Shown here: positions 1 through 35,644 of the stretch, piece after piece
How positions within the stretch are numbered: the stretch's first letter is position 1
How the letters are laid out: each line of letters opens with the position of its first letter
From: Diplonema japonicum
Lineage: Eukaryota; Protista; Euglenozoa: Diplonemea
Direction of reading: 5' to 3'
Assembly (NCBI GenBank): GCA_964019335.1
Contig: OZ025661.1
Span: forward strand, 1 to 64,000
DNA: 64,000 nucleotides
The notes under the pieces: generated by a model
Told to the model about the DNA's origin: nothing
The model's input: the letters and a program-made list of their open reading frames with translations, nothing else
The model's database searches: none
Made by a program: the position numbers and the translations under genes

Positions 1-2110
1 TGCGGGTTTGCGGGTTTGCGGGTTTGCGGGTTTGCGGGTTTGCGGGTTTGCGGGTTTGCGGGTTTGCGGGTTTGCGGGTTTGCGGGTTTGCGGGTTTGCG
101 GGTTTGCGGGTTTGCGGGTTTGCGGGTTTGCGGGTTTGCGGGTTTGCGGGTTTGCGGGTTTGCGGGTTTGCGGGTTTGCGGGTTTGCGGGTTTGCGGGTT
201 TGCGGGTTTGCGGGTTTGCGGGTTTGCGGGTTTGCGGGTTTGCGGGTTTGCGGGTTTGCGGGTTTGCGGGTTTGCGGGTTTGCGGGTTTGCGGGTTTGCG
301 GGTTTGCGGGTTTGCGGGTTTGCGGGTTTGCGGGTTTGCGGGTTTGCGGGTTTGCGGGTTTGCGGGTTTGCGGGTTTGCGGGTTTGCGGGTTTGCGGGTT
401 TGCGGGTTTGCGGGTTTGCGGGTTTGCGGTTTGCGGGTTTGCGGGTTTGCGGGTTTGCGGGTTTGCGGGTTTGCGGGTTTGCGGGTTTGCGGGTTTGCGG
501 GTTTGCGGGTTTGCGGGTTTGCGGGTTTGCGGGTTTGCGGGTTTGCGGGTTTGCGGGTTTGCGGGTTTGCGGGTTTGCGGGTTTGCGGGTTTGCGGGTTT
601 GCGGGTTTGCGGGTTTGCGGGTTTGCGGGTTTGCGGGTTTGCGGGTTTGCGGGTTTGCGGGTTTGCGGGTTTGCGGGTTTGCGGGTTTGCGGGTTTGCGG
701 GTTTGCGGGTTTGCGGGTTTGCGGGTTTGCGGGTTTGCGGGTTTGCGGGTTTGCGGGTTTGCGGGTTTGCGGGTTTGCGGGTTTGCGGGTTTGCGGGTTT
801 GCGGGTTTGCGGGTTTGCGGGTTTGCGGGTTTGCGGGTTTGCGGGTTTGCGGGTTTGCGGGTTTGCGGGTTTGCGGGTTTGCGGGTTTGCGGGTTTGCGG
901 GTTTGCGGGTTTGCGGGTTTGCGGGTTTGCGGGTTTGCGGGTTTGCGGTTTGCGGGTTTGCGGGTTTGCGGGTTTGCGGGTTTGCGGGTTTGCGGGTTTG
1001 CGGGTTTGCGGGTTTGCGGGTTTGCGGGTTTGCGGGTTTGCGGGTTTGCGGGTTTGCGGGTTTGCGGGTTTGCGGGTTTGCGGGTTTGCGGGTTTGCGGG
1101 TTTGCGGGTTTGCGGGTTTGCGGGTTTGCGGGTTTGCGGGTTTGCGGGTTTGCGGGTTTGCGGGTTTGCGGGTTTGCGGGTTTGCGGGTTTGCGGGTTTG
1201 CGGGTTTGCGGGTTTGCGGGTTTGCGGGTTTGCGGGTTTGCGGGTTTGCGGGTTTGCGGGTTTGCGGGTTTGCGGGTTTGCGGGTTTGCGGGTTTGCGGG
1301 TTTGCGGGTTTGCGGGTTTGCGGGTTTGCGGGTTTGCGGGTTTGCGGTTTGCGGGTTTGCGGGTTTGCGGGTTTGCGGGTTTGCGGGTTTGCGGGTTTGC
1401 GGGTTTGCGGGTTTGCGGGTTTGCGGGTTTGCGGGTTTGCGGGTTTGCGGGTTTGCGGGTTTGCGGGTTTGCGGGTTTGCGGGTTTGCGGTTTGCGGGTT
1501 TGCGGGTTTGCGGGTTTGCGGGTTTGCGGGTTTGCGGGTTTGCGGGTTTGCGGGTTTGCGGGTTTGCGGGTTTGCGGGTTTGCGGGTTTGCGGGTTTGCG
1601 GGTTTGCGGGTTTGCGGGTTTGCGGGTTTGCGGGTTTGCGGGTTTGCGGGTTGCGGGTTTGCGGGTTTGCGGGTTTGCGGGTTTGCGGGTTTGCGGGTTT
1701 GCGGGTTTGCGGGTTTGCGGGTTTGCGGGTTTGCGGGTTTGCGGGTTTGCGGGTTTGCGGGTTTGCGGGTTTGCGGGTTTGCGGGTTTGCGGGTTTGCGG
1801 GTTTGCGGGTTTGCGGGTTTGCGGGTTTGCGGGTTTGCGGGTTTGCGGGTTTGCGGGTTTGCGGGTTTGCGGGTTTGCGGGTTTGCGGGTTTGCGGGTTT
1901 GCGGGTTTGCGGGTTTGCGGGTTTGCGGGTTTGCGGGTTTGCGGGTTTGCGGGTTTGCGGGTTTGCGGGTTTGCGGGTTTGCGGGTTTGCGGGTTTGCGG
2001 GTTTGTGGGGTTTGCGGGTTTGCGGGTTTGCGGGTTTGCGGGTTTGTGGGGGTTTGCGGGGGTTTGCGGGTTTGCGGGTTTGCTGCGGGTTTGCGGGTTT
2101 GCGGGTTTGC
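1..2110. repeat. Terminal tandem array (GGGTTTGC)n, ~264 units; probable telomere with inverted polarity
   Basis: Near-perfect 8-bp repeat from base 1. Isolated 1-nt deletions occur near 428, 948, 1347, 1490 and 1651, and variant units cluster at 2000-2090 next to unique sequence. The three long + ORFs over it are artefacts. Confidence 0.95.
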
Positions 2111-3413
2111 AGGCTTTGGGGAGCATCGCCACCAGCAGCCAAGCCTCCTCTGTGTTGTCCTTCACCACTCGGCCCAGAGTGTGCTTAAGGGTAAGCCCCC
2201 ACAGTCTTTGAAGGCTCGTCGGGATCGACCCCATGGTCGTGACGTTCATGGCGGCTATGGTTTCCAGGCTGGGTAACTCGGTCCTCGTCGGGGCAGGCGG
2301 GGGGGTCGTGTATTCCCCTTCCCTTCGCACCGCCTTTTTGCACTCGTCGTGGCACCCCTGACCCTTCCACACACAGCCCCTGCACACCAGGCACCTCTCG
2401 AGGTCCAGTCTCCTCAGAACGCTCTCCGGGATCTCATCACTCTCCAGGTGCCCATCCAGGTGACACTTCCATACCCTTGTCGAGTTGAACGGGGTCGTGC
2501 TTTTGCACTTCGACCTAGCGCAGTTCGCCACCGGACAGTACAGGAATTGCTGGTTCCTTGCCCCCATCTGGTCCAACACCCCTGCCTTCCCATATCCAGG
2601 GATCGCACGGTCTATTATGTCCCACTCCCCGATGTCCTCACCCGGGGCCTCGGAGGGTTGCTTACCTGCCTTTTGTAGAGCTACCGATTGGGACTCATCA
2701 AGGAGCATCATCATCGACTCCTCCTCTCCGACTGCATACTCGTAGTGGTTGCCGTTGTACGCCAGCACCACCACCTTCTCGTGGTCGGAGTTGTACTCCC
2801 CTATCATCAGGACTGGGTTGTTCCCCCCAGCAACCACGAGTATCGTGCGGCCAAACGCTTGTGCTGCGGCTGCCAGGCACAAGTGGTCTCCCCACGTCGC
2901 TGCTGTGCCCATCCCTTCCAAGTACCGGTCCCAACCCTCACTGCAAAACGGGGCATAGTGCTCCTCCCGGTGTTTCATCCATTCTACAACCTCGCTCCTG
3001 ATGTGGGTGTGGTCGCCGTAGGCTTCCCCGAGCGAACCGGCCAGGGCGTGGAACATGCAGTTCCCGTCCTTCTCCGTCGATCTCCTCGTCAGCTTGAAGC
3101 TCTTCATGATCTCGTCCACTGACTTGCCGGCCCTGGGTTGTTTGTCGGGGTTCCACAGATTCCGCTGCCTGTGTAGTGCACAGTGCGTCTGGTTCGACGA
3201 GCACGCCGCAGCACACGTTCCACAGAGGTTCACCTTCATGCTCCTCGCCTGCTCTTGTTTCACAAAATGATGGTGGACCGCATTGAGGTGTTTAACTAGA
3301 CAGCTTGCCACACTGGTGCGGAAAGAGCAGTCTTCCATCCGGCATTGATGTTTGTCTGATCCTTCTTTTTCCCCCTCCTTCTGCGCCTCCATGTGCTCAT
3401 CATCCAAATCCAT
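2109..3413 (-). mobile_element. 5' part of a CRE/SLACS-like non-LTR retrotransposon ORF (C2H2 fingers + OTU protease), 3'-truncated by the terminal repeat
   Basis: Manual translation from ATG 3413 gives 435 stop-free codons: HQCRMEDC..KHLNAVH finger, OTU motifs DGNCMFHAL / WGDHLCL / YNGNHY, CPVANC..CHLDGH finger, then LPSLETI..SIPTSLQRLW..DNTEEAWLLVAMLPKAC, which resembles the pre-RT region of CRE-clade ORFs. The frame stays open into the repeat, so the ORF track omits it. Confidence 0.75.
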
Positions 3414-3430
3414 GGGGGGATCTCCCGGTA

Positions 3431-4200: not shown

Positions 4201-5486
4201 GTTATCAAGATTGGGTTCTGCTTCGCATGTCTGTTTCGCTTTTCAATTTCTTCTCTTTTCTTCTCACGTTCCCGTCCTTTCCTCTCCTTTTCTTTGTATT
4301 CTTCAAATTCGACTCTTATGTCCTCTTCGCTGCTGTCTTCCTCTTCTCCGATAGCATGAATGGCATCCGCTAGCGCTGCATGTCGTTGAAATGAAGATGG
4401 AGTGGGTGGCAGGAAGTGGTTGTCTGACTTCGGAGTGGCTGGTGCCAATGTTTCCGATCCAATGATCTGCGCAGCGGATCTTGCACGTAAGTGCATGGTC
4501 ATGTTTAGGAGAAAACAAAACAAAAAAAAAAAGAAAGGTGGGTTTGCGCAAGCGCAGCACCACCGCTACCAAAAATTTCATTGTGGAAGCCAGGCAAGCC
4601 CAGCCCCTACCAACGTTCCAAGCGAAGTGCAATGCAAGGACCGTTGATATGTCGGCACCCTACTTGATCAGGCCAGACACCAATCAGGTATGTACCTTCC
4701 CAAGAAACAAGGAAGGCTATCTTATCAGAAATCCCAACCCAAGATCTTTGCCACAGGTTATGCACACATCCTCGATTACAACAAAGGAAACCCAAAGAAA
4801 CGTGAAATTGAACCGAGCAACTCCATTTTTGATGGGCTCACGAAGGGCAAGACTGTACTCTACACAGGATCTGTTTTTGAGTATACTCGTGTTGGAGATT
4901 ACTTACTTCGGCACAAGACCAAAGCTGAGGCCAGGCTTGTACCGCATGAGCGATGATTGCAACTTTCGTTTGCCTCCGTCCTTTTATGGTGGAGAATGTG
5001 CAACCTGGTCACTTACAGCTTGTGAAACACACACACATTGAAGATTCTTTATTTCTTCATCTTTTTTGATTCCAAAAAAATACCTCCAGACATGTCCTTT
5101 CGTACGGATTCGATATGCTCCAGGTATGCAAATAACAAAGACCACTTTTTGTCTTCACCTTTGCTTCGCACGTCACTGGTTCATTTATTATTATGAGTTC
5201 TGCTTACAGACTTGAGTGGAAAAAAGTTATTTGGTAACCATGTACGTTGTTTTTCTCTTGTTATTATTTATTATTTAGTGACTAGGTTTTAAGAGGTGAT
5301 ACCCAAAAGGGCCTGCGTGGTGACACATCTGCATGGATTATAGGAAGACAATACCGACCTCGCTCCAGCATAATCGTCAGATTATAACAGATCGTACCAT
5401 AAACCCCTCCTTTTTCTTCAGTTACTTTCTGCAGAGGGTTACTAATGCTATTTACTGCCAACAAGTAATGACTTTACTGATGACAA

Positions 5487-6919: not shown

Positions 6920-7445
6920 GAAAGTACGACGCCCACCGTCAGTCCGGAGGAGGTGTGCATGATCTTCCTAGCAACTGCTTGGTAGTGGCCGTTGTTGAGA
7001 TCTGTACCTCTCCGTTGTCGTCGAGCGCCCTCCTTGGTTGTTGCTGGGGCTCGGCTGCAGCTGGAGTCTTTCTAGAGACTAGGGCCCGCTTGTCCCATGC
7101 AGACTTCTGCCTCCGGAATGTCTTTGGGGACTGGGGCTTGTCAGATTTCTTGTCGCAGACTGGTTGCCCCGTGTGGTAGTCCGTCTGTCCTTTGGTGCAG
7201 TAGCTGGCTTCGTGAGATCGCCTGCGTGGCCTGTCTTGCCCATTCAGGTTTGGGCTTGCGTGTTCTTCCGTTGCCGGGTTTGCGGGTTTACGGGCTTCGG
7301 GTTGTTCCAGTGCTGCTTGCCACGCTTGTAGGTAGCTTGTCCATGCCACGGCGCTGTGATCTCGGTCTTCTCGCTTCTCGGCAGCGTCCCCAACATTCGC
7401 AACTTCGCGGAACTGAAATGCGCGGCGGTAGCTGAACCACTCTCA
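6920..7445 (+). ncRNA. Unassigned structured RNA; candidate telomerase RNA with G-rich template
   Basis: A-poor, G+T-rich + strand with several hairpins that need G-U pairs on + (e.g. 7155-7188). Contains a perfect 15-nt match CGGGTTTGCGGGTTT to the terminal repeat at 7275-7289 and sits next to the SRP and U2 genes. Boundaries are approximate. Confidence 0.4.
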
Positions 7446-7474: not shown

Positions 7475-7783
7475 GATGGGCGATGCGGTTCAGGTAGTCT
7501 GAGTGGCAGAGACACAGGCACTGCTCAGTTCTGCTATCCTGGAACTGTCCGTTGCGGGAACTAGGAGCTGCTCTGATGGCCAGCCTGGCCCGGTTCGTCC
7601 CTCTTCAAGCTCTGTGTTGACGAGTCTTGCGACAAGCCTGCACTGAGCACACCGGACTAACCAGGACAGAACATCAACACAGCACACTGCGCCTCCGATC
7701 CCCACACAGGAACGACCCAGTTCCACATCGTCGCTTGCCCCCCCAAAGCTGGGTGTTTCAGGATGCTGCCTACACATCCCGGC
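7475..7783 (-). ncRNA. SRP (7SL) RNA
   Basis: Starts GCCGGG..CCTG..CCCAGCT (Alu-domain-like). The S-domain reads GAACCGGGCCAGGCTGGCCATCAGAGCAG, matching helix 8 CAGG..AGCAG. Length ~309 nt, ending in a T6 Pol III terminator at 7469-7474. Confidence 0.85.
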
Positions 7784-7864: not shown

Positions 7865-7980
7865 TACCATCCAGGACTGACTTTTCCCGTGGGTTCATAT
7901 CAATATCATTTCAGCTTGTGAAGTGACACGTTCATCTCGTCTCCAGCATGTTTGAGTTGGTGGATTTTAAAAAAGAAAAG

Positions 7981-8172
7981 TAGGGTGTGCCACTCCTGGA
8001 TGTTGTGCAGCTCCAGGGCAACACCTGTGGACAGACTCAGGTTGCCCTGAGCTACCTGCCACCCCCAACGACAAATTAGTTTAATATCGCAGCACACGAG
8101 GTGCTGTATCAGATATTAAGCTGATAAGAACAGATACTACACTTGATCTTAGCCAAAAGGCCGAGAAGGTAT
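7981..8172 (-). ncRNA. U2 snRNA
   Basis: Minus strand reads ATACCTTCTCGGCCTTTTGGCTAAGATCAAGTGTAGTATCTGTTCTTATCAG, the canonical U2 5' end with GUAGUA. Also an Sm-like AATTTGT, a 3' hairpin CCTGGA..TGCAC..TCCAGG and a following T-run. Confidence 0.97.
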
Positions 8173-11358: not shown

Positions 11359-12810
11359 CTAAGGAAGAAACAGAACGAAGTTTGTTTTATGGAACGTTCT
11401 ACCACTACTATGCCATAGGTATGAAACAAGAGTTGTCCATGGAAGATGCTTTCTTTTGAATAGATTCGAATTTCTTTTTATTCAGCTTGATCGATTTTAT
11501 TGTGCCGATGAGCCCCGTGCCGTCGAGGTCTACGTGCAGGTAGTAAGACATTTACGAACATACCTTTCGGAAGGTGAGTGAGTAGGTGAAAACAAGCATC
11601 GAAAGAAGCTTCTGCAAGCTCTTTATGAAAGTGTAAAAGTAAACCTGGGGTGTAACATAACGATTATTGATTAATTGAATGTACCTATCGCACTCTTAAA
11701 CAGCCAAGAGGGGTGCAGCAGAAACAGATCCCAAATATTGCAAGCAACATCAATCGGAAGGCTTTTGCTGAATATCGTAATAAACCTAGCAAGTGGCTCA
11801 TTGTTGAAATAAGTGCCATACCAATCGTAAACGTAAAATTGTGGGTGCAGCCCGATTGCGGAGAAGTGCCCGTACAAAGAAGGCAACACCTCACAGAAGG
11901 TCAAATCATACACGCGAAGGGAGATGCCAATCTCCTGCGGGATGACTCTGAAAAAGGACAATAGATGGCTGTGGTGCAGCAGGTTGGCCAGCGACACAAA
12001 CACGTCTTCGGGGTTCATGTGCAGCAACATCATCGCAACGATGTACGACATGCCCTGCACGTACCCCACATCAGGGCGATACTGCACGTAGGCCTGCAAG
12101 ATCGACGCCATCGCGTCTCGCAGTGGCCCTTCTTGGAAGAACTGGAAGCTGGGAAAAGTCCGCGGCAAGTCAATATCGATGCTCTCCAACGCCGCCTGCT
12201 CAGCTTCGGCCTCCTCCGTGATGCTCCTGTTCTTATCTTTCAGCGCCTCCCGTGCAGCGGCTCCCCGTATGCGGAAAATATTATACAAGTCGGGAGTAAT
12301 TTGCAGCTTGTTCCCTATCGCCCTCTGCCACAACGCCGCACGCACCTTCTCAGGAACACCCTCCATCCACAACTTCCGTGCGCGCTTTGATCCATTTGCT
12401 CCTTCCCAGTTTGGGAAGATATCTTGCTCCCACACAGTAATCTGCCTGCAGGTGTTCTTCTCTTGTTCTTCTTCTTCTCTTCTTCGTCTCCTTTCACTTT
12501 CAGCGGCCTTTTTCGCCCCTGCATTCAGTGCCGCTATCTGTTTGGCGTGCAGCAATGCTTCATTGCGCGACTTAGGCGGCAGTCCTGAAGGCCGCCCCGT
12601 AAGGCCGTTCAGCAGATCTGCTGGCGTAGTTGCCATGCTTATGCTTGGGGGCGCTGTGGACAGCTTTAAATTAGGCTTGAAGATCCCTTTTACTTTTTTC
12701 ATGACCTTCTTGGCGCCATTCTCCCTACTTCCTTCGGACCTTGTCGGCGAGCACACTTCATGTTCTTCGGTGTCCGGACCTGTGGTCCCGCTCCCTGCTG
12801 ACTCTAGCAT
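11359..12810 (-). CDS. TBC-domain Rab GAP (TBC1D12/14-like), 3 introns
   Basis: IDIDLPRT and GYVQGM motifs. Introns 11786-11821, 11645-11684 and 11530-11563 restore the C-terminus; the 3' end is approximate. Confidence 0.9.
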
Positions 12811-12972
12811 AGTTGCAAGGTTGCTGCTGTATGCATATTTTTTGTGTCCTGAGGGGAAAATAGTGTTATTTAGATAGCAAGCAGCAGTTCAAAGCAGTAG
12901 TAGTGCATAATGTAAATTAGTTAACCATAAAATATAAAGCAAGGTGCAAATACAACCTTGCTTACTAGCCTT

Positions 12973-13833
12973 CTAGGCTTGCTTATTTTGGCACTGCTGG
13001 AGACATTTTATTTTTAAGCCCGTCTGCTCCTGCAGCAGCATCTCATCCCTTTTTCTCTCCATGCATACAGCACGCTTTTGCTCCAACAGCTGTTTCGTGG
13101 CTAAAAAATGTACAATGGGCACCTGCGTGACACCGCAGAGGTCATGGAACGACACATGCACGAAGCACTCGCGGAAGCGGGTACGTGACTGGTCGCAGTC
13201 GCCCGTGGCAGGCGGTTGGGGTGCGTTCTGCTCCATCTTTGATGATGACTAAGGTGGAGCGATATATGCATACCAATGCCTCATCTGCTACGTCGGATGG
13301 TTGCAACAACGGGTTGTTGTGGATGAACAGCTTCTGGAGCTCTCTCATTTCGAGCACGCCACTGGGGTACGCTCGGATGTGGTTCGTATCCGCTTGCAAT
13401 TCTTGCAATTTTTTTAAGTTCCATATTTCATGGGGCAACTCCTGTGCGGCAGTGCAACATCACTAAAGCATACCGTCAATCGATTGTTGTTAACATGCAG
13501 CCTCTCCAAGTGCCGCAACTTTCCAATGTCTGCAGGAAGACTCTGCAGGTTGTTGTACGCAAGATTCAGCCACGTAAGATTTGTGAGGTTCCCTATTGCG
13601 GCAGGCACGCTGCTCAGCTGATAGCAGTTGTCAACGTGCAAAATAGTCAGCTTAGGCTTTAAAATCTTGATGTCTTCAGGAAAGTGCTTCAAGTCATGGT
13701 TGTGGCAAAAGTGAAAAGAGGTGTCGCCCCTTTCTAGCGCATCCTGTGAAAGTCGGAAACGTGGGAATCATACCTGTATCTCTTCGCACAACTGGTCCTC
13801 CACCATCTCCTCTTCTGTGAGGACGCCATACAT
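12973..13833 (-). CDS. Leucine-rich repeat protein, 3 introns
   Basis: LRRs (LxxLPxxIGxLxxL). Introns 13744-13773, 13442-13473 and 13249-13273 join the ORF pieces in frame. Confidence 0.85.
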
Positions 13834-13860
13834 TTCTGAATAGCTAATGTCTTGAATGAG

Positions 13861-16800
13861 TCATAGAAAACCGAAGACTAGAAACAAAAAGCCAGCTGAT
13901 CTAAACGAAACTACTTGTACTTTACAATGTGATGATCTGGTTATGTTGTTCATAAGGGAGTCAGGGCACACCTTTGATAACCGTCCTTTAACATCGTCAC
14001 TGCACAAGAAGGGCACAGGCGAGTCCTTCAGCGCGGCAACGATGTCATTCCGCACCTGCGACCTGCCCATTGGCTGCAGCAGTCCCATGACTGTCGCGTG
14101 AAGCTGTTGTGATAGCTGAGGTTTGCTTTTGCATACTTGTGTAAGAGATATCTTTTCTACAATGGCTGGCGTCATGAGGCACACGAGGGTGATGTAGTTG
14201 TAAATATCTACAGAGCCCTTGCCAAGTGCTCCGCTCCGCAAAGCACGTAGCTGCAAGTTAGTCACATTCAGAACCTGAGAAAGACGTTGAATTTTGCCTT
14301 CACATACCTTCAGGCCACATATCTCCAGTACCAGATGCTCAGCCTTCCTCATATCTTCCTCAGTGGCACCGATGCTAGAAAGGATGTTTTCAAGATCGTC
14401 TTTTTTGCTCTCACTCTTGCTGACAACGCTTTCTTCTTCCCCCTCAATCTCTTCTTCTTCTTCTTCTTCTTCCTCGTCTTCTTCTTCCTCATCTTCTTCC
14501 TCCTCCTCTTCTCCTTCGTCCTCGCTGCTCTTTTCGGTATCACTAGCGGAACTTAACTGTGGTGAACATGAATACTCTGCACAACGCATACCTCGTCCAG
14601 CTCCAGACTACATGAGGAGCTGCCTTCGTCGTCCGAAAGGTCGAAGTAGTGATCTTCAATCACTTTGTGTGCCATAAACAGGCAGCTGGTTGCAATTAAA
14701 GGACTGTGCAATGGCCGTGGCATGCCTGCGACCTTGACAAAGGTATCAAACAGATAAATGCCGACCAAGTAATGGCTGACGTCTAGTTGTTTGTAGCATT
14801 GTGCAAACAAGCGCAGTACCTCCGTGAGGCACGCGGTTCGCTGGCGAAGGGTTTCTCCATTGAGCAAAGGCGAGCTGTCGACAGGAAGGGGATGCACATA
14901 AGCATCAGCTTTATGCATGAGGCACAATTGCTTATCGTCCTCTGCTGGTGTGTCGACAGTAACAGTGTCGAAGAAAGAGTGTTGCTTGGCTGCAGAATGG
15001 AGTATCCGCTTTGCAGGGTTGCAGATTAGCATCTCGCTCAGCAGGTCTGCCAATGCTTCCCACTCGGGATCTTCTTCATCTCCAACGATCTCTTTCCTCA
15101 TCGTATGCTGCGGTTTTCTAGGCACCTTAGACAGCATGTCTGTCATTTGAAGGTACTTGGGAAGCTCTTCGAAGCCTGGCCAGTCGTTTTCAGTTGGCAC
15201 ACCCAGCTCGGTGAATACCATCTCCAGAAGGTTATCATCGTTGTGTGAGGAGTCATCAGTGTCGAAGAGAGGACCTCTCACCACAAGGAAAAACACTACC
15301 AGTGCAACGGACCAAATGTCACAAGCGAAGGTGTATGTGTCGCAACCCATTGATATCTCGGGTGGGCGGTAGTCCAGTGTGAAGATGTGTCGATGCCACA
15401 TAACTGGTGCGAACAGCCGTGCTTGTCCGAAGTCCGCAAGCTTGATAAGCTCAGTCTTGTCGTCCCACAGGATATTAGCGGGTTTCCAGTCTCTGTGGAC
15501 GATGTTCTCGGAATCAAGGAACTCGCATACTGTCAGCAGCTGGTAGAAAATTCTCCTGATTTTAAACAAGTTCCTGTTGAACTTAATGTCGTGCAGCGTG
15601 CGGGGGTGACTATCCATAACAAGGAAGACGTCTCTAAGATTGACTGCTAATCCATGTAGACACACAACATAGGGGTGGCCTCGCAGCTTTGTGAGGGTGC
15701 TGATCTCTCTGAGTACGTCTTGGCTTATCGTCTTACTTTTTAAAAGGAAGCGTTTAACTGCCAAAGGTGTGCGAGAGCTGTTGTTTGCCACGTAGCATTT
15801 ATAGACCTTGCCGTGCACCCCTTCTCCTAGTATCTTACAATACCTAAAGTTTGTGAAGCTGAAAGACTCTGATGACTTCGTGACTGGCTGCCCGTTCACG
15901 ATGTCATTTGTACCCTGCGTGTAGATCCCATAGTACACGTCTGCTAGTGCATAGATGATGGCAGTTGTTGCACTCAGCACTGTGAGGCGACCCCTCCCTG
16001 ATGAAACGAGGGTCTTGATGCTACTGTATATTTCGTCAAGCTGCCTGTCCATGAACCTGTCACTCACGTCATGTATAGTGAAGCAAGGACTTTCGTCAGG
16101 GTATCCACTTGGTACGAACACCTCAATGCCTGCCTTCTTTCCTGGGCGCAACCCTTTAACTTCAATATCCATCCAGTACCTATCCTCCCCCTCTTCCCTC
16201 AATGGAAGATACGACTTGAGGATGGTCAACTCATCTTGTAATGAATTTATAGCCCGTGGACAAGGTTCACCGGTGGGCATGTCCTGTGCAGATTTATGGA
16301 TCGTGCAAAACTTGATTCGAATAACGAGTTACTTTTTCTCCACGCTTAACAATGGATTCACTTGAAATATGAGAGACAGTACCTCCCGAGCATCTGATGT
16401 TGTAAAACCATCATACGCGTCACTGTCGTCGTCTTGGTCGTGGTCCATCGCTTTGATGGTGTAGTAGTAAAGCCCAGCGCTGTCGAGGTCTTCCCTCACA
16501 TCCGCATCCCACACCGAAGCATAGCCGTCCCTTAAGAGCATCGACCAGGCCTGGGAGGGCGTTGGGTGGTTGGCATCCTTGACGACGTATTTAGATTCAG
16601 ATTTGCTTTCAGTATCGCTGCCCAAGGCGTCACTTTGAACAATACGTGTGACCCGTCTGCAAGGCAACATGGTGTCAGGCAAGAGCTCTGCCAGCTCGCT
16701 GAACACCTGAGATGTGCATGTCACCAAGAACATCTCAGGAAGTGCTTTCGTTATCTTCATAGGGTGTGTGCCCCTCGGGTACAGCAGGTCCCAGTCCCAG

Positions 16801-17138
16801 TTCATCGCAATGGTCATCCCATCCTTGCTCAGTGTCATGCTCAGCGGGCTAATGAACTTATCGTTCTCGTCACTGACACGTACACCTGCCAGCAGCAGCC
16901 TACTATCCGACAGCAGCCCTGAGAAATTGTACTGCACACCCTCGCCTGTCCATGAACAGCTAACTCTGTCCTCGCATTGTTCAAACCTCACATTGTAGTA
17001 GACATTGTCCTTGAAGTGCCACAATCCCCACCACCCTTCCCATTGCTTCGTAGGCAGAGAGCTCTTATAATTATCAAACTCTCTATCGTTGTCAATTAGT
17101 GTTCCGTGCTGCTCCTCCAGCAGTTGGGCCAAACTCAT
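13861..17138 (-). CDS. RWD-like + CDK-like kinase + cyclin-box fusion protein
   Basis: VPSGYPDESP (RWD-like); GEGVHG, AVK, HRDWKPAN, DFG, TLDYRPPE (CDK-like); LFDTF..IATSCLFMAHK (cyclin box). Intron 14557-14591 links to the acidic C-terminal ORF. The link to ORF 16329-17138 (same frame, GT-AG sites at 16284-16382) is less certain. Confidence 0.75.
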
Positions 17139-17196
17139 CTTGCCAGCCTGTGTGACCTCAGTGGAATAAATTAATTTATATCAGAAGAGAGGGCCT

Positions 17197-18165
17197 TTAG
17201 TTGCGTATTCCTTCTAAGAAGCGCCTGACAGCACGCTGTAAGACAACTGAGGCATTGATGTGTACCTGGGTGTACGACTCAGTACGCTGCAGGGTGTGCA
17301 CCTCGTTGCACGCAGCTGTGACATAGGCTGCTACCGACAGGCCCTCAAGTCTTGAGTTGCCTGACAGCTCTGGGGTGAAGCAGGGGAGGGCCACACAGGG
17401 TAGCGTTCTCAATGTTTTTGGCGGTACTGGCTTCCGAAATCTGCTGGTGTGTAATGGCGTTAGACTGTAAAGTTCTTGCAGCACAGCGGCATTGTATTGA
17501 CCGTTGGTCTGCCACGGCACTTCTTCGTTTTGATCGCTCTGCCTATTCAGAGCAAAAATGGTGTCATCTAACGACACTGCAACCACAGGAGCGCTCTCAG
17601 AGCATTCGATTTCACCGACACGAACAGGGACCTTCCCTGCTACTATCTGCTGCTTCACACTGCAAGACTCCAACTTGTTCAACACATGCATCAACCTCTT
17701 TTCCAAAATGTCCTTCTTGCTACTATCACTGCACAACGCCTTTAATGTGTGCAACATGTTCCAACAGGCTGCTGCTGCAAGCGATCGATCCCCTTCGCTT
17801 TCTGCCTTCTCTAGTCCAATGCAGCTGTATTCATACGCACCTTTCATGTCCTCCGCGTCCATGCATGCTGCCGACATGTTCACGTAGATCTTCGCGTCGT
17901 TTGACATTTGGTTGTTGTCACGTGTTTTTATCTTTCTCACAGCAATGCCCAATTCCCTAATAGCAGCGTGTTTGAGACCCGTGTCGGATATCTTCTCGAC
18001 AAGCAGCAGTGCCTCCGACAACCACAGTGCACCATCGTCACCACCGAGGTCTGCTGCTCTGCAATGCTGCGTGATGACCTCCTTCAAGATATGGTATTTG
18101 TGCGATGCACTTCCTACTGCGAGTAATAACTCAAGGTCGGCTAGGCGCTTCCTGACTCCTTCCAT
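17197..18165 (-). CDS. Hypothetical protein (helical, TPR-like middle)
   Basis: Long ORF co-oriented with its neighbours; ATG at 18165. Confidence 0.6.
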   Translation of the reverse strand: MEGVRKRLADLELLLAVGSASHKYHILKEVITQHCRAADLGGDDGALWLSEALLLVEKISDTGLKHAAIRELGIAVRKIKTRDNNQMSNDAKIYVNMSAACMDAEDMKGAYEYSCIGLEKAESEGDRSLAAAACWNMLHTLKALCSDSSKKDILEKRLMHVLNKLESCSVKQQIVAGKVPVRVGEIECSESAPVVAVSLDDTIFALNRQSDQNEEVPWQTNGQYNAAVLQELYSLTPLHTSRFRKPVPPKTLRTLPCVALPCFTPELSGNSRLEGLSVAAYVTAACNEVHTLQRTESYTQVHINASVVLQRAVRRFLEGIRN

Positions 18166-18223
18166 AGCATCATAGTGTAACCTATGGTGCCGTTTGTGTT
18201 TACAACTGTGTCGGTTGTGAATA

Positions 18224-19108
18224 TTAATTGAAGAGAGCTCTATAAGTCTCCCGCGGGTTCTTTGTTTCCCGCTCAGTGAGAAATGATGGTGGGTCCATGG
18301 CTGAATCTTCCATGAGCTCTTGCCGTCTCTCCTCTTCCTCGTGCGCACGTTGCCTTTTCAAAAGCTCCAACGTTTCGAAGGTCGAAAGTGCCTTCACACA
18401 CCGCCTGTCAGGTGCCGCAGTCTTGTTCGGGACCACGTGGATGTTGCGTTTCAAGATCTTTGCTTGCTGCGCCCTGTGATGGTTATTTAGGCAACTTGCA
18501 TACCTGTCTCCCTGAGGCAGTGCCGTGACGCTTAAGGTGTCTAGAGCTGCTAATATCTTATTTGCGGTTTCTTTGTCGCCGCTCCTGTTGCATTATGAAA
18601 AATATACATGACAATACCTCAAGTAAACTTCCATTTGCACCAGCATGGGCGCTCTGTTGTCCGCCACGTTGTCTCGCGTAACGCTCCAAGGTGCTAGCAT
18701 TTTCTCCGCAGCTTTAAGCTGCTCTTCAGTAGGCATCTCTGGTTTCCTTGATTCAGTTACTTCACTCCGTTTTGTTTCTGTTTTTACTTCGCTCGCCGTA
18801 CCCCCAAGAGGATCTCCTGCGGGCACGCAGATCCTTACTTCTTTCTTAGGCTCCGCTTTGACCTCTTTCTCTACTTCAGTATTTTCATTCAGCTTAATAT
18901 TCCCGATTTTCATTGGCAAACCGCCAAGCAGCATGGCCTCTTCCTTGCTTTTGATGTCTTCTAGCCTAGCCTTGTACCCCGCGATCCTCTTGTGTATTCT
19001 CTCACCTTTGTCACGTAACCTGTTGATGAGCGCTTCATCCGCGAGAAGTGACTCAGCCCCTTGCAAATCATTCTCCACTTCCCGCTTCTCCCTTAGGAGT
19101 GTTTCCAT
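18224..19108 (-). CDS. Hypothetical coiled-coil protein with weak GRINL1A/Gdown1-like N-terminal motif, 2 introns
   Basis: LINRLRDKGERI motif. Introns 18585-18617 and 18474-18503 join the ORFs. Confidence 0.55.
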
Positions 19109-19180
19109 GATGCCTGTGGTGTGTTGCATAACGAATGTGTTGGTTTAAATAAGTGTACTGCTTCTTTCCCTCTCCTATAT

Positions 19181-19870
19181 TTAATTATCATCCGTTTTTT
19201 CATCAAGCTTTTCTTTGAGTTCAATCGTTTCGGAGATAGGTTCTCGCTTCTCCAGCGGCGCAGCCCCAGGGTCGTCGCTGCCACGCGGGCCGTTCAGGAC
19301 GTGCATGCAGTAGATGTTAAAGAAGAAACCACCCAAGCGTGTAAAGGCCACCCTGTGTCTCAGAGGGACCAAAGTGAATGTAAGCGTGTCCATTGTTAGC
19401 CACAAGGGCAACCCGACCACGAACATCTCCTTGAACTTAACGGGCCACTCTTTGCAGAAGTTGCTGAGGTTCCCATCTCTCATGCCCATGTTCATGATGA
19501 TACCGCATGTGTAAATGCACGGCGTCACCACAAAGTTATCAAGCATCACCTGTTGCCACCAAGGCATCCCGTACTGCAGCAGAGCGAAGTACCCATACTC
19601 TACTGGCCCATAGACGGAGCCAATCACTAATATCCTTCCTAATCTGAACCAGTCCCAGTCTTGCTCAGCTAATTCTAGCTCTTCACCTTCCTCGGCCTCT
19701 TCGAGCTTCTTTTTATTCTGTATGCTGTTTGCTGCCATCTCGCCCGACTGCGACAGCAGATCTGAGATGCCTGCCGTGATCGACACCACAACAGAAGCCT
19801 CGATGATGGCACCGTGCACACCCGACATTAGCCATTTGAAGCCACCACCGGTGAAGATAAATGGATGCAT
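19181..19870 (-). CDS. Mpv17/PMP22 family membrane protein
   Basis: SDLLSQ..DWFRLGR..LDNFVVTP..FTLVPLRHRV pattern. Confidence 0.8.
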   Translation of the reverse strand: MHPFIFTGGGFKWLMSGVHGAIIEASVVVSITAGISDLLSQSGEMAANSIQNKKKLEEAEEGEELELAEQDWDWFRLGRILVIGSVYGPVEYGYFALLQYGMPWWQQVMLDNFVVTPCIYTCGIIMNMGMRDGNLSNFCKEWPVKFKEMFVVGLPLWLTMDTLTFTLVPLRHRVAFTRLGGFFFNIYCMHVLNGPRGSDDPGAAPLEKREPISETIELKEKLDEKTDDN

Positions 19871-20051
19871 TGTGTAACTGTAAGGAAATGATGAAAGAAA
19901 CATCAAAAAGGCACAAAAAGACGAACTTCAAAAAAAGGAACGCAAGCAGGCAAATATAAAAGGCCGAGTGTAAGCAGTACATTTACTGATGGTAATACAG
20001 CAATACTAAACAAAAAAAAATTGACAAACTGGCAAACAGGATTCCACGATC

Positions 20052-20582
20052 TCACAGAACGATCTTCCTTTCTTGTAGAGGTCGCAGCTTAGGGCGCATG
20101 AGTTGAGAAGGGTTGCTCAATTGACTGTTTTCGATGATAGCAAGTGTGTGGTCAGGAACGTGTTCCATTTTGGGGAGCTTGGGTCTTTGCAACTTGTGAT
20201 CTCTGCGCCTAGGGACGTTGTGTGTTTCTCCAACCTTCAAAAGGGAAGCATTACAGCACGTATGCTTCTTGAGCACCTCATTGTACAGCTTCCTCTGTTT
20301 GGTTGCCTTTTGCGCAGCAAGGTGGACCTCTTGAAACAGCAGTTTATCACTACATCGGGGGATGGGGTCTAACCATGGCCTATAACCTAGCAGATTGGGG
20401 CGCAGCCGAGCCTCCGAAGACCTGTCGTGCTCAATGTCGTCGCTTGATTCTTGCTGATGACCACATGCCTTTTTGAACACCCCTATCCGTGCGTTGTCTG
20501 GCATGGGTCGCTTCAACCAAGCACTGCTGTACCCCACCGCTTGCACAGGACATCCAGTAAGCTCATCTTCCGGGATTAGCAT
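20052..20582 (-). CDS. Hypothetical protein
   Basis: 176-aa ATG ORF co-oriented with the array. Confidence 0.5.
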   Translation of the reverse strand: MLIPEDELTGCPVQAVGYSSAWLKRPMPDNARIGVFKKACGHQQESSDDIEHDRSSEARLRPNLLGYRPWLDPIPRCSDKLLFQEVHLAAQKATKQRKLYNEVLKKHTCCNASLLKVGETHNVPRRRDHKLQRPKLPKMEHVPDHTLAIIENSQLSNPSQLMRPKLRPLQERKIVL

Positions 20583-20667
20583 ACCATTAGAAGTGATGCC
20601 TAGTTAAGTGGAGTGCCGAATTATACTCATCAATGAAAGAAAACCAGAGAGCAAGTACTAAAACGGC

Positions 20668-22449
20668 TTATTTATTGGTTATAAGAGCCTGTAAAATGAA
20701 GACATAGTTTACAGCTGCCATACAGGCAAAGCAGCCGTACCACTGTGGATCGGTGTCGCAGTCTCTGGTGAAGAGTGCTACGTGACCCCAAATGATGTTG
20801 GCCAACCAGCTTATGAACAGAAGCAACAGTGAGACACCCCCCGTTATTTGAGTAAATCGATCTTGCGCTCTGTTGAGATCTTCTTGGACCCAGTCGGCAA
20901 CCAAGTACACCAACGATGCTGCAAGCGTCACGGTACCGTGGAAGATGCACCATGCAGCCAGGAGACCCGAGCACACGGAGACGGCGTAAGCACCCCATCC
21001 TACACATATGAGCCCTGTGATCCCCACACAACTAAGCTTGGCTCGCCTCCATAGCACCCGTCGTCGTGTGCTTTGCCTTGCTTTTTTCGCAAAGTCTTTC
21101 ACATTGTAGCACACATCGGGAAACGTGGTTACAAAAGGACACTTCTCCCAGTTCAGCTTCTGAGTGAACTTCTTCATTTCGCTCCATAACTCGATCCCCA
21201 TGTCGTGGTCCCCAGTCTCTACTAAGTGCAGCTCTTTCTTCCCTACCGGTGTCCCTGCCAACCCGTACAGCCTACTCGAGTGATCATAAGGGATCACAGG
21301 GTCCAACATGCCATGAATAATCATAAGGGGACATGTCACATGTGCGATGCTCTTGTACGACTCGAACCTGTTAAACACGAGCCGTGCCGCAGCTGATGTG
21401 AGGCACCCTGCTGCATTTTTCCCGAGATGCTTCACTATGTGGCACCAAGAAAGATATGGAGACTTGAGAATCATTGCACCTACAAAAAGCCCCTGCCTCT
21501 CGAGCATGGCAGCGGCCTGGACACACGGCCCTGTAGCTAAGCTCCTCCCGTACAATATTATCCTGTCCAGAGGGACATCCAGCTCGCTGTGGATATACAG
21601 AATTGTGTCCAGCAACACCTCAGAGAGATTGCACTCTGTGGGCTTCCCTTCTGCCAGACCGTACCCAGGCCACTCCAGACCAAGGACAGACATCTCGAAC
21701 GTAGACCTGTACGACTGTACTACGGGGTTCTGTCCTATGTCACAAGCGTTGCCATGAGCAAAGATGACGACACCCCTGGACCTTGGGAAGGGCAACCATC
21801 TGGCGGGCACGTCTAGATTGCAATTAGGGAGCGATAGGTATATGAGATCAGCAAGCGTTTCGTCGTAGTGGGCTTTGGGGGGGCGGAAGAAGGCGCTATT
21901 GACGATAGAATGTTCTTTCAGAAAGGTTTTGATCCACGGCTCGACACAGGGAGCGGACCACATGGGAACGATGGGCGGAGAGCCGTAGGGGTCAGTACCA
22001 TGCCGCCGCCATCTTCGCACTTCGATGTCGCGCTGTAGGCGCAGCTCGGGTCTACTCAAGCTGTTGTAAAAGGCAGCGATCTCTGTCTTGTTTACGCCTT
22101 TCGCAGTATCGCCATTGTAGCCACTGACTGCAGCCCACTCATCTGCTGCGGCATCACGCAAGGTGAATGTGTTGTCCCGCAAGTTGTCGTTGTACGTCCT
22201 GCACAGCATGGCAACGCTCACCTCAGAGTAAGTGCAGAGGTTCAGCAGTGCGTCATCTTGATGGGTGTCGGTCACACTCCCCTCGCATACGGGTCTCTCT
22301 TCTTCTTGCTCGTCGTCGCTGGACCCAACAATACTTAAGCTCTTCGCCGCGTCATGCAGTTCCGGCCCCGGTAGCGTCTTCACCACTAAGGGACTCTCAA
22401 CTGTTAGGGGGCATTGCTTGCTCTTATTACCCCCTGTAATGTCAGCCAT
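20668..22449 (-). CDS. ABHD17-like alpha/beta hydrolase with C-terminal TM segments
   Basis: HGNACDIG, WPGYG, YGRSLATG, IIHGMLDPVIP, GDHD; hydrophobic C-terminus. Confidence 0.85.
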   Translation of the reverse strand: MADITGGNKSKQCPLTVESPLVVKTLPGPELHDAAKSLSIVGSSDDEQEEERPVCEGSVTDTHQDDALLNLCTYSEVSVAMLCRTYNDNLRDNTFTLRDAAADEWAAVSGYNGDTAKGVNKTEIAAFYNSLSRPELRLQRDIEVRRWRRHGTDPYGSPPIVPMWSAPCVEPWIKTFLKEHSIVNSAFFRPPKAHYDETLADLIYLSLPNCNLDVPARWLPFPRSRGVVIFAHGNACDIGQNPVVQSYRSTFEMSVLGLEWPGYGLAEGKPTECNLSEVLLDTILYIHSELDVPLDRIILYGRSLATGPCVQAAAMLERQGLFVGAMILKSPYLSWCHIVKHLGKNAAGCLTSAAARLVFNRFESYKSIAHVTCPLMIIHGMLDPVIPYDHSSRLYGLAGTPVGKKELHLVETGDHDMGIELWSEMKKFTQKLNWEKCPFVTTFPDVCYNVKDFAKKARQSTRRRVLWRRAKLSCVGITGLICVGWGAYAVSVCSGLLAAWCIFHGTVTLAASLVYLVADWVQEDLNRAQDRFTQITGGVSLLLLFISWLANIIWGHVALFTRDCDTDPQWYGCFACMAAVNYVFILQALITNK

Positions 22450-23419: not shown

Positions 23420-23490
23420 CAAAAACATAAACAAAAACAAAAACAAAAACAAAAACAAAAACAAAAACAAAAACAAAAACAAAAACAAAA
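23420..23490. repeat. (AAAAAC)n microsatellite in a long intergenic/3' UTR region
   Basis: Direct inspection. Confidence 0.9.
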
Positions 23491-25999: not shown

Positions 26000-26071
26000 T
26001 AGCAATACATTTCATATGTTTTCCTGTATGTTTTGAGACGGTAAGGCAAATAAATATAAGATAAGCTGATG

Positions 26072-28536: not shown

Positions 28537-28618
28537 GACCTTAGCTACGTGGGGGAAATAAATAATAACAAGCACTTTGCGGAAAACTAGGACATAAATC
28601 CGAGCTCATGGAAATGGC

Positions 28619-34854: not shown

Positions 34855-34944
34855 TTAGCATTCCTATTGAGCGTAGTGAATAAATTGTAAAAAACGCCAA
34901 AGATAATAATACAGCTAAACATAACTAAACTAAACAGCTGAACT

Positions 34945-35571: not shown

Positions 35572-35644
35572 ATTCCCTATATTGTGTTCATGACAGGATC
35601 TTCTTGCAGAAAAAAGCGATAAGAGATTGCGGCCACGCTACGAC

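What the first reader, a model, noticed from the sequence alone, without database searches (positions are those of the whole stretch)
1..2115. Probable telomere with a non-TTAGGG 8-mer and inverted polarity (C/A-rich strand runs toward the end)
Seen: (GGGTTTGC)n from base 1, homogeneous distally and degenerate proximally, then transposon debris, then a gene array transcribed toward it. This is the usual telomere-subtelomere layout. Established: in telomerase-maintained telomeres the G-rich strand runs 5'->3' toward the end, so a left end should read C-rich on +; trypanosomatids use TTAGGG. Here + is G-rich, so the 3'-terminal strand would be (CCCGCAAA)n. Inference: if base 1 is a chromosome end, the organism extends a C/A-rich strand. 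That would need different end-binding proteins and would preclude a G-quadruplex 3' overhang.
Basis: partly seen in the sequence, partly recalled or inferred. Interest (0 to 1): 0.9.

Follow-up and report, generated by a model that had tools for sequence, protein, structure and literature searches.

The report
Chromosome-end repeat with reversed strand polarity
The window starts with a real chromosome-end repeat, an unusual 8-letter unit in what is very probably the marine protist Diplonema japonicum, and at every end examined its G-rich strand points inward, the opposite of all known telomeres; if wet-lab tests confirm this, it breaks a rule thought to be universal.

Summary
**Observation confirmed.**
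- Bases 1-2110 are 263 copies of TGCGGGTT (98% match).
- The window is the first 64 kb of contig C14. No gap lies between the array and the genes.
- The assembly matches the PacBio HiFi genome note for Diplonema japonicum. This is a diplonemid, not a trypanosomatid.

**Polarity.**
- Of 16 contig ends sampled, 13 end in this octamer. All 13 have the G-rich strand 5' at the terminus.
- (TTAGGG)4 is absent from the genome.
- Eight of the 13 termini start exactly 5'-GGGTTTGC (p = 4e-5), so these look like natural DNA ends.
- On chromosomes 1 and 4 a perfect array sits 400-700 bp from ordinary genes, so the polarity does not come from retroelements.

**Context.**
- A divergent TERT gene exists. No telomerase RNA was found.
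- Window 2111-3420 is an internal piece of a >9-kb OTU+RT retrotransposon, joined to the array with 2 nt of overlap.
- The "debris" zone also holds U1, U2 and SRP RNA genes.

**Verdict.**
- It is a telomere with a new repeat (about 0.9).
- The polarity is physically reversed (about 0.75).
- Telomerase extends the C-rich strand (about 0.5, inferred only).
- No raw reads were available.
- Other first-stage notes flagged the same reversed octamer on other pieces of this genome. None was followed up.

The parts
1..2110 (+). Terminal array of 263 copies of the octamer. The G-rich strand (GGGTTTGC) is on +, so its 5' end is at the contig and chromosome end. The strand ending 3' at the terminus reads (GCAAACCC)n.
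   Evidence: The window is C14:1-64000.
1999..2110 (+). Proximal degenerate part of the array, with variant units GGGTTTGT, GGGG/GGGGG and an extra TGC.
   Evidence: unit census.
2109..2111 (.). Junction between the array and a broken retrotransposon. The two bases GC (2109-2110) fit both the repeat and the element.
   Evidence: One search compares the junction with the intact element in L039. Five other ends show 1-4 nt of overlap at different internal points of the element. (run X1) shows the array joined to four further internal points.
2111..3420 (-). Internal fragment of a >9-kb R2/CRE-clade non-LTR retrotransposon, truncated at both its 5' and 3' ends. It corresponds to about codons 575-1010 of the element's 2554-aa ORF. 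The OTU protease domain is encoded at about 2751-3068. The sense strand points toward the chromosome end.
   Evidence: at least 40 copies, 97-100% identical; maps to L039 5920-7231; OTU + RVT_1 in the full ORF; RT most like R2 proteins; open 436-aa frame, OTU E = 3.6e-13.
4536..4695 (-). U1 snRNA gene, full-length model match, followed by a T-run in the sense direction.
7247..7304 (+). Decayed interstitial relic of the same repeat in the same orientation as the terminal array. Its core is a 15-nt perfect run at 7275-7289.
   Evidence: In-register degenerate units flank the core.
7479..7783 (-). Signal recognition particle (7SL) RNA gene, full-length model match, followed by a T-run.
7980..8172 (-). 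U2 snRNA gene, full-length model match, followed by a T-run.
11671..63342 (-). Dense same-strand array of protein-coding ORFs transcribed toward the chromosome end. It includes RabGAP-TBC, several protein kinases, a class-III aminotransferase, APH, beta-galactosidase, WD40 and PPR proteins.

Best explanation
Window 1-2110 is the left telomere of chromosome-scale scaffold 14 of what is very probably Diplonema japonicum.

**Shown**
- In this diplonemid the telomeric repeat is the octamer TTTGCGGG/CCCGCAAA.
- The duplex tract is oriented with the G-rich strand 5' at the terminus. The strand that ends 3' at the chromosome end is therefore (CCCGCAAA)n.
- A divergent TERT gene is present.
- On the G-rich strand the tract is followed by a T-run and then antisense element sequence. 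This fixes the direction of cDNA synthesis as running from the array into the chromosome.

**Inferred**
- The divergent telomerase uses an RNA template with a permutation of GGGUUUGC to extend the C-rich 3' strand.
- The G-rich strand is then filled in, and its 5' end is trimmed to a fixed register (5'-GGGTTTGC).
- Eroded or broken ends are healed by new repeats added at 1-4 nt of overlap. The window's junction on a broken retrotransposon would be one such event.
- 3'-OH ends of the G-rich strand, pointing inward, prime reverse transcription of polyadenylated RNAs (TTT pairs with the poly(A) tail). This builds stacks of retrotransposon copies whose sense strand runs outward, in the same direction as the last gene cluster.
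For: **Terminal position and polarity**
- The array starts at base 1 of a contig. No gap lies between it and 62 kb of genes.
- 13 of 16 sampled contig ends carry the array, all with the G strand 5' outward. Lengths are 164-2110 bp, median 385.
- The first rows of the pattern scan show the same polarity at C1, C3 and C4.
- 8 of 13 termini begin exactly GGGTTTGC, binomial p = 4e-5. Natural ends with a defined 5' nucleotide would give this. Random breaks inside an internal array would not.
- No run of four TTAGGG units is present anywhere.
- On C1 and C4 a perfect array lies 400-700 bp from ordinary genes (FAD oxidoreductase, exostosin, peptidyl-tRNA hydrolase) with no retroelement between.
- The data are 102x PacBio HiFi assembled with hifiasm. 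Reads average about 9 kb by my arithmetic from the read and base counts. That is long enough to span the array plus unique DNA at these ends.

**Telomerase**
- The TERT candidate has Telomerase_RBD followed by RVT_1.
- It has three homologues at 37-42% identity, two of them with Telomerase_RBD above the Pfam cut-off.
- A profile of the four sequences hits telomerase reverse transcriptase chains as its nine best PDB matches. The only other match is much weaker, at E = 0.25.

**Junctions and retroelements**
- Healing-type junctions with 1-4 nt overlap occur at six ends. Four more appear in an independent run.
- 40 of 41 element copies lie within about 13 kb of a contig end, all in the same orientation relative to that end.
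- The C75 end reads array, then a 257-nt element piece, then T50, then a 19-nt mini-array, then T7, then the element. This shows outward read-through transcripts that carry C-rich repeats before their poly(A) tail.
Against: - No eukaryote is known, to my knowledge, in which the 3'-terminal telomere strand is the C-rich one, so the prior is low.
- Everything rests on one assembly from one technology. Only Logan contigs, not raw reads, could be laid, and none of the listed ones bridges the 2110/2111 junction.
- No telomerase RNA was found, so the template polarity is unknown.
- The only template-like run in the window (7275-7289) would read C-rich if transcribed with its neighbours on the - strand. 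That is the canonical template polarity. However, it looks like a repeat relic.
- cDNA chains start from G-strand 3'-OH ends in variable register. That is also what a canonical G-rich 3' overhang would produce, although such chains would then have to lie distal to the array, and they do not.
- The octamer looks like a derivative of the TTTAGGG/TTAGGG type. By homology, the G-rich strand would be the telomerase product.
Confidence: 0.5

Rival explanations
1. The arrays are the true ends with the reversed polarity, but telomerase does not maintain them by extending the C-rich strand. Instead the tract is kept up by recombination or break-induced copying between ends, or by reverse transcription of repeat-containing read-through transcripts by retroelement RT. 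TERT would then have another or a reduced role.
For: - Read-through, polyadenylated transcripts carrying C-rich repeats are demonstrably reverse transcribed back into the ends (the C75 chain).
- Near-identical elements (97-100%) at about 40 ends show frequent exchange or recent activity.
- The TERT is very divergent, only 24-28 bits to Telomerase_RBD.
- No telomerase RNA was found.
Against: - Ends on C1 and C4 have perfect 330-385 bp arrays directly on ordinary genes with no retroelement.
- The defined terminal register and the 1-4 nt overlap junctions at many different internal points of the element are typical of templated de novo repeat addition.
- TERT is conserved in three relatives with catalytic motifs invariant in the alignment.
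Confidence: 0.2
2. The arrays are subterminal, not the physical termini. Something distal is missing from the HiFi assembly at every end, for example a canonical-polarity cap, a covalently closed hairpin or palindrome, or heavily modified DNA that does not yield HiFi reads. The true 3' end could then still be G-rich.
For: - No raw reads could be inspected.
- Diplonemids are reported to contain base J (it appears in the abbreviation list of the D. papillatum genome paper). In kinetoplastids base J concentrates in telomeres (my own knowledge).
- Three of 16 ends stop inside elements without an array, so the ends are not all complete.
- The low prior for reversed polarity also favours this reading.
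Against: - If arrays were internal, contigs on both sides would give both polarities. Observed: 13 of 13 in one polarity.
- The fixed 5' register at 8 of 13 termini argues for natural ends.
- Internal arrays that do exist are short (20-120 bp), degenerate and read through by the assembly.
- No contig starts with an inverted C-rich-to-G-rich switch.
- Array lengths vary from 164 to 2110 bp, as telomeres do.
Confidence: 0.2
3. An assembly or scaffolding artefact: terminal contigs were flipped during Hi-C scaffolding or curation so that repeat arrays face outward, or hifiasm inverted the terminal blocks.
For: - The genome note reports 242 contigs in 121 scaffolds and 69 manual joins or breaks.
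- Small repeat-rich terminal contigs are hard to orient by Hi-C (my own knowledge).
Against: - There are no N gaps in the window or in any of the fetched end loci.
- In the window only 1.3 kb of shared repeat separates the array from chromosome-specific sequence.
- On C1 and C4 only 400-700 bp separate the array from unique genes, so single reads of about 9 kb (my arithmetic) fix the orientation.
- The same pipeline gives canonical polarity in other published assemblies (my own knowledge).
Confidence: 0.03

Closest known systems
Canonical telomerase-made telomeres of other Euglenozoa (TTAGGG in trypanosomatids)
   Same: - Short tandem repeat tracts cap both ends of nearly all chromosomes.
- Tracts run from a few hundred bp to 2 kb.
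- Same-orientation relics lie in the subtelomere.
- The last gene cluster is transcribed toward the end.
- A TERT gene is present.
- Healing-type junctions show short overlaps.
   Different: - The unit is an octamer (TTTGCGGG) not reported in the papers I could search.
- The G-rich strand has its 5' end, not its 3' end, at the terminus.
- The telomerase RNA is unknown.
Telomere-repeat-specific non-LTR retrotransposons TRAS and SART of Bombyx mori (from my own knowledge)
   Same: Non-LTR elements sit inside the telomeric repeat tract in one fixed orientation, with their poly(A) tail abutting the repeats, alongside a telomerase-type repeat.
   Different: - Here the RT is of the R2/CRE clade and is fused to an OTU protease.
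- No AP endonuclease was detected.
- The repeat register at the junctions varies, and many copies lack their 3' part.
- This looks more like priming from pre-existing 3'-OH ends, or erosion followed by healing, than a site-specific nick.
Drosophila HeT-A/TART/TAHRE terminal retrotransposon arrays (from my own knowledge)
   Same: Head-to-tail stacks of non-LTR elements lie at chromosome ends, all in one orientation, with variable truncation.
   Different: - In Drosophila the poly(A) ends face the centromere and there is no short repeat cap.
- Here the 3' ends face the terminus and a short-repeat tract caps the stack.
5' C-rich overhangs in ALT cells and C. elegans (for ALT; C. elegans from my own knowledge)
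   Same: A C-rich telomeric strand can be single-stranded at chromosome ends.
   Different: Those are 5' overhangs on telomeres of canonical duplex polarity. Here the whole duplex tract is reversed, so a C-rich overhang would be a 3' overhang.

Membership tests
Telomerase-maintained eukaryotic telomere | Short tandem repeat tracts at both ends of (nearly) all chromosomes | tested here: met
   13 of 16 sampled contig ends, both left and right, carry the tract. The genome has 5568 four-unit matches against 0 in the reversed-pattern control.
Telomerase-maintained eukaryotic telomere | The G-rich strand runs 5'->3' toward the terminus and so is the 3'-terminal strand | tested here: not met
   All 13 array-bearing ends have the G-rich strand 5' at the contig end. 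No gaps separate arrays from genes. This is an assembly-level test only.
Telomerase-maintained eukaryotic telomere | The genome encodes a telomerase reverse transcriptase | tested here: met
   The C41 ORF has Telomerase_RBD followed by RVT_1 and motif-like stretches A, B' and C. Homologues carry Telomerase_RBD above the cut-off. A profile of the four sequences hits TERT chains as its nine best PDB matches, at weak E-values from 5e-4.
Telomerase-maintained eukaryotic telomere | A telomerase RNA whose template is complementary to the 3'-terminal strand | tested here: inconclusive
   Roughly 70 isolated 12-19 nt repeat-like runs exist inside chromosomes, plus a satellite. None could be fetched or singled out. 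The run in the window looks like a relic.
Telomerase-maintained eukaryotic telomere | The tract is physically terminal and heterogeneous in length | tested here: inconclusive
   Lengths are 164-2110 bp and the terminal register is fixed at 8 of 13 ends, p = 4e-5. Both favour true ends. No raw reads were available, and Bal31 cannot be done here.
Telomerase-maintained eukaryotic telomere | De novo repeat addition onto non-telomeric ends at short overlaps | tested here: met
   Six ends show 1-4 nt of overlap at different points of the element, including window 2109-2110. Four more join points appear in run X1. The same junctions could also arise by internal priming of reverse transcription.
Telomere-repeat-specific non-LTR retrotransposon (TRAS/SART type) | An RT-encoding non-LTR element inserted in the telomeric tract in one fixed orientation with its poly(A) against the repeats | tested here: met
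   The full ORF has RVT_1 and OTU and its RT resembles R2. 40 of 41 copies lie near ends in one orientation. The array is followed by T4-60 and then the antisense 3' end of the element.
Telomere-repeat-specific non-LTR retrotransposon (TRAS/SART type) | A site-specific endonuclease nick at one fixed position of the repeat unit | tested here: not met
   The junction register varies: after GGG, GGGTT, GGGTTT, GGGTTTG and GCG. Pfam detected no endonuclease domain. An R2-type endonuclease was not excluded.
Drosophila-type retrotransposon telomere | No short-repeat cap, and elements attached with their 3' ends toward the centromere | tested here: not met
   A short-repeat cap is present, and the 3' ends of the elements face the terminus.
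Interstitial satellite | The array is flanked by other sequence on both sides | tested here: not met
   The array starts at base 1 of contig C14. The same holds at 12 other ends.

The most novel reading that the evidence does not exclude
Diplonemid telomerase (or another end-dedicated reverse transcriptase) copies a G-rich RNA template and extends the C-rich strand. Chromosomes would then end in a (CCCGCAAA)n 3' strand, with the G-rich strand as the filled-in, 5'-trimmed strand. This would be the first eukaryote with reversed telomere polarity. It would imply end-binding proteins that recognise a C-rich overhang and outward telomeric transcripts that are C-rich.
Probability: 0.5. Interest if true: 0.95.

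Novelty: new variant of a known kind. Interest (0 to 1): 0.85.

Why it matters
In every telomere studied so far, the strand that runs 5'->3' to the chromosome end and is extended by telomerase is the G-rich one. Models of end protection are built on that: POT1/Cdc13/TEBP-type binding of G-rich overhangs, G-quadruplexes, t-loops, G-rich TERRA, and CST-directed fill-in of the C strand.

Here a gap-free long-read assembly shows the opposite orientation at every end examined, in a free-living relative of trypanosomes that still has a TERT gene. That makes a sharp question directly testable: is G-richness of the 3' strand a mechanistic requirement or a frozen accident?

Even if the polarity call fails, three things are new for this lineage as far as the searchable literature shows:
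- the octamer repeat;
- the defined terminal register;
- the retrotransposon stacks primed from the repeat tract.

The organism is cultivable, and a genome, Hi-C and RNA-seq already exist for it.

Tried and rejected
1. **Raw-read test of the ends.** The look-up of sequencing runs returned only runs kept as Logan contigs. Laid on window 2030-8000 (5971 letters, within the operators' limit), they cannot show read ends. None of the listed ones bridges 2110/2111. They did show the array at very high depth and joined to four other internal points of the element.
2. **Wider tally of contig ends.** Later genome-search runs could not cut loci for the same reason. I did not try to read more genome letters by other routes.
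4. **Telomerase RNA by motif.** Two phase-specific patterns with non-periodic flanks gave 129 and 42 hits against 4 and 2 in controls. That is too many to single one out, and they include a 77-bp satellite. I abandoned this after two of eight phases.
Its core is a 15-nt run flanked by in-register decayed units. It lies in moderately repeated DNA, and on the strand of its small-RNA gene neighbours it would read C-rich. I rejected it as a good candidate, but it is not excluded.
6. **Metagenome scan for the repeat.** It returned 22 loci, all short internal minisatellites in unrelated contigs and none with the diplonemid spliced leader. It says nothing about polarity.
7. **Literature.** No paper in the searchable library reports this octamer as a telomere or describes diplonemid telomeres or telomerase RNA. 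The D. japonicum genome note does not mention telomeres in the text held. One indexed mention of 'telomeric repeat' is outside the readable text.
8. **Scaffolding artefact.** Rejected because no N runs exist in the window or the fetched loci.
9. **Taxonomy from proteins.** The aminotransferase search and the protein atlas gave no useful lineage signal. The genome-note match and the spliced leader settled it.
10. **Word-based homologue search with TERT.** It found nothing. The exhaustive HMMER search was needed.
Full report
**What is in the sequence**

Window 1-2110 is a tandem array of the octamer TGCGGGTT (GGGTTTGC in another register). It has 263.4 copies at 98% match. In a unit census, 252 of 262 units are exact. 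Before base 1999 the only variants are five one-base homopolymer losses. Substitution and insertion variants are confined to 1999-2110.

The + strand is the G-rich strand. At 2110/2111 the array meets non-repeat DNA.

**Is base 1 an end?**

The window is G000:C14:1-64000, so base 1 is the first base of a contig. The assembly has 62.5 Mb in 132 contigs.

Size, chromosome number and individual lengths (C1 1,191,308; C3 999,969; C4 980,513) match the genome note for Diplonema japonicum YPF1604. That note reports 62.30 Mb, 118 chromosomal scaffolds, chromosome 1 at 1.19 Mb, 102x PacBio HiFi, hifiasm 0.16, and YaHS scaffolding with manual curation.

Subtelomeric copies of a spliced leader ending ...CAGTTTCTGTACTTTATTG agree with a diplonemid or kinetoplastid-type organism. 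That comparison rests on my memory of the published leader.

There are no N runs in the window or in any fetched end locus. The array is thus joined to the genes within one HiFi contig, not by scaffolding.

**Polarity at other ends**

I fetched 16 contig ends.
- Eleven left ends begin with (GGGTTTGC)n on the + strand.
- Two right ends finish with (GCAAACCC)n on the + strand.
- Three ends stop inside subtelomeric elements without an array.
- None has the opposite polarity.

The first rows of the genome-wide pattern scan show the same at C1, C3 and C4. The reversed-pattern control gave 0 hits against 5568. Four TTAGGG units in a row occur nowhere in the genome.

Terminal arrays are 164-2110 bp long, median 385.

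Eight of the 13 termini begin exactly 5'-GGGTTTGC. The expectation for random breaks is 1 in 8, giving binomial p = 4e-5. A fixed terminal register is what natural ends with a defined 5' nucleotide give after end repair. Shearing inside an internal array would not give it.

If the arrays were internal, the contigs on their two sides would show both polarities. They do not.

**The polarity does not depend on retroelements**

On C1 and C4 a perfect 385-bp or 330-bp array lies only 400-700 bp from ordinary genes on the outward strand. These are an FAD-dependent oxidoreductase, an exostosin-family transferase, a peptidyl-tRNA hydrolase and glycosyltransferases. No retroelement lies between.

Reads average about 9 kb (7.93 Gb in 840,000 reads; my arithmetic). 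Single reads must therefore cover array and unique genes together. In the window itself only 1.3 kb of shared repeat separates the array from chromosome-specific DNA.

**What flanks the array in the window**

Bases 2111-3420 are an open 436-codon frame on the - strand with an OTU protease domain. The fragment is 99.8% identical to an internal part (L039 5920-7231) of a >9-kb non-LTR retrotransposon. That element's 2554-aa ORF carries OTU and RVT_1, and its RT is most like R2 proteins.

At least 41 copies exist. Forty lie within about 13 kb of a contig end, always with the sense strand pointing outward. The window's copy lacks both its 5' part and about 5 kb of its 3' part.

The array is joined to it with two shared bases, GC. 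Five other ends show the array joined at other internal points with 1-4 shared bases. Contigs of an independent run show four more join points.

The rest of the 'debris' zone is not only debris. Full-length matches to U1 (4536-4695), SRP RNA (7479-7783) and U2 (7980-8172) lie on the - strand. Each is followed by a T-run in the sense direction, as genes rather than retro-copies would be.

A decayed four-unit relic of the repeat, in the same orientation as the terminal array, lies at about 7247-7304. From 11671 onward a dense - strand gene array runs toward the end.

**An arrow from the retroelements**

Intact 3' ends of the element read, on the G-rich strand, as array, then T4-60, then antisense element. 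That is cDNA synthesis primed by a 3'-OH of the G-rich strand on a poly(A) tail.

At C75 the order is array, a 257-nt element piece, T50, a 19-nt mini-array, T7, then the element. This requires an outward read-through transcript that carried C-rich repeats before its poly(A) tail, followed by template switching.

The direction of synthesis is therefore from the array into the chromosome, and the register of the priming end varies. Both fit insertion at nicks or lagging-strand ends within a tract of the assembled polarity.

A canonical G-rich 3' overhang would also prime such chains. But they would then lie distal to the array, which is not what the contiguous assembly shows. I count this as unresolved tension, not as refutation.

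**Telomerase**

One ORF on C41 matches Telomerase_RBD and, downstream, RVT_1. It has stretches resembling TERT motifs A, B' and C (the motif assignment is by eye).

An exhaustive HMMER search found three homologues at 37-42% identity. It also found, weakly, a protein with a 99.7-bit Telomerase_RBD match.

A profile of the four sequences hits telomerase reverse transcriptase chains as its nine best PDB matches, in both the RBD and RT regions, with E from 5e-4. The only other match is much weaker, at E = 0.25. So a divergent TERT is present.

I could not identify its RNA. Isolated 12-19 nt repeat-like runs are far too numerous: 129 and 42 hits for two registers against 4 and 2 in controls, including a 77-bp satellite. 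The loci could not be fetched.

**Most likely mechanism**

*Shown:*
- an octamer tract caps the chromosomes;
- its G-rich strand is 5' at the assembled ends, in a preferred register;
- the tract is joined to broken DNA at short overlaps;
- G-strand 3'-OH ends prime reverse transcription of polyadenylated RNAs;
- a TERT gene exists.

*Inferred:*
- the 3'-terminal strand in vivo is (CCCGCAAA)n;
- telomerase extends it from a G-rich template;
- the G-rich strand is the filled-in strand, with its 5' end trimmed.

My probabilities:

| Claim | Probability |
|---|---|
| The tract is the telomere | about 0.9 |
| The polarity is physically reversed | about 0.75 |
| The full telomerase reading | about 0.5 |

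**Rivals**

- Reversed ends kept up by recombination or by retroelement RT: 0.2.
- True termini missing from the assembly (a canonical cap, a hairpin or modified DNA): 0.2.
- Scaffolding or assembly artefact: 0.03.

**Comparison with what is known**

The layout is that of a telomerase telomere with telomere-targeted non-LTR elements, as in Bombyx TRAS/SART. It fails the defining polarity feature of canonical telomeres at the assembly level.

It is unlike Drosophila ends: a repeat cap is present and the elements have the opposite orientation. It is also unlike the 5' C-overhangs of ALT cells, which sit on canonical duplexes.

I found no paper describing this repeat or diplonemid telomeres.

**Earlier notes of this scan**

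Other first-stage readers flagged the same octamer in the 'wrong' polarity on other pieces of this genome, together with stacks of retro-copies joined by it. None of those polarity notes had been followed up. They are not independent evidence, because they read the same assembly.

**Limits**

- Only assembled contigs of public runs, not reads, could be laid.

Noticed in passing
window 4536-4695, 7479-7783, 7980-8172 (all - strand): Full-length U1 snRNA, SRP (7SL) RNA and U2 snRNA matches cluster 4.5-8 kb from the chromosome end. Each is followed by a T-run in the sense direction, so they look like genes rather than retro-copies. No tRNA gene lies anywhere in the window, unlike the tRNA-linked small-RNA genes of trypanosomatids.
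   Followed up: partly
G000:C112:201119-205683 (- strand): A tandem satellite with a 77-bp period and at least 55 copies. Each copy contains ATTGCGGGTTTGCGGGTCGACC, which is 15 nt of telomere-like sequence.
   Followed up: no
Genome-wide, e.g. C47:127809, C54:380110, C66:160073, C85:244532, C95:355851: Dozens of isolated 12-19 nt runs of the telomeric octamer (often CGGGTTTGCGGGTTTGCG) lie deep inside chromosomes, far more than the reversed-pattern control. Some are followed by T-runs, like retro-copy junctions. Others might be protein-binding sites, or one of them the telomerase RNA template.
   Followed up: no
L041 (C75:1-9000) 1-620: A chain reading array, a 257-nt element piece, T50, a 19-nt mini-array, T7, then a full element. 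This is evidence that read-through transcripts ending in C-rich telomeric repeats are polyadenylated and reverse transcribed, with template switching.
   Followed up: partly
L056 (C105:282000-291999) 727-800; L047 (C3:990000-999969) 1845-1890, 2455-2500, 3795-3835: Copies of the spliced leader (...ACCAACGATTCTAAAGCTACAGTTTCTGTACTTTATTG) sit in subtelomeres in the outward orientation. At least three continue into closely similar intron-like sequence starting GTCGT or CTCGT. One abuts a C-rich octamer tract directly.
   Followed up: partly
L047 1625-1675 and L048 (C16:762000-771999) 5485-5545: A conserved stretch of about 50 nt ending ...ATTTCTCGTGCGGGTTTGCGGGTTTGCGG recurs at two subtelomeres. 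In L047 it lies about 180 nt upstream of a spliced-leader RNA copy on the same strand. It could be a promoter-like element or part of a repeat.
   Followed up: no
L055 (C105:1-9000) 316-706 and the 3' ends of other element copies: The retrotransposon's 3' UTR begins with a 24-nt tandem repeat, on the G-rich strand AAAAAGGGGGACTTGAGAAAATAAAT. Its copy number varies from about 2 to more than 15 between copies.
   Followed up: no
window 29991-32480 (- strand): A class-III aminotransferase gene is followed by an APH phosphotransferase gene. After four eukaryote-like hits, the aminotransferase's best matches are bacterial (Dyella, Rhodanobacter, about 55% identity). Several database relatives have the two domains fused (PF00202 + PF01636). 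This may be a horizontally acquired gene pair.
   Followed up: no
L059 (C41:532474-535800): The TERT candidate starts with a weak CCCH zinc-finger-like stretch (aa 53-82). It also has an unusually short spacing between the motif A-like and B'-like stretches. One homologue (P0121) is fused to, or merged with, a cyclin domain in its gene model.
   Followed up: partly
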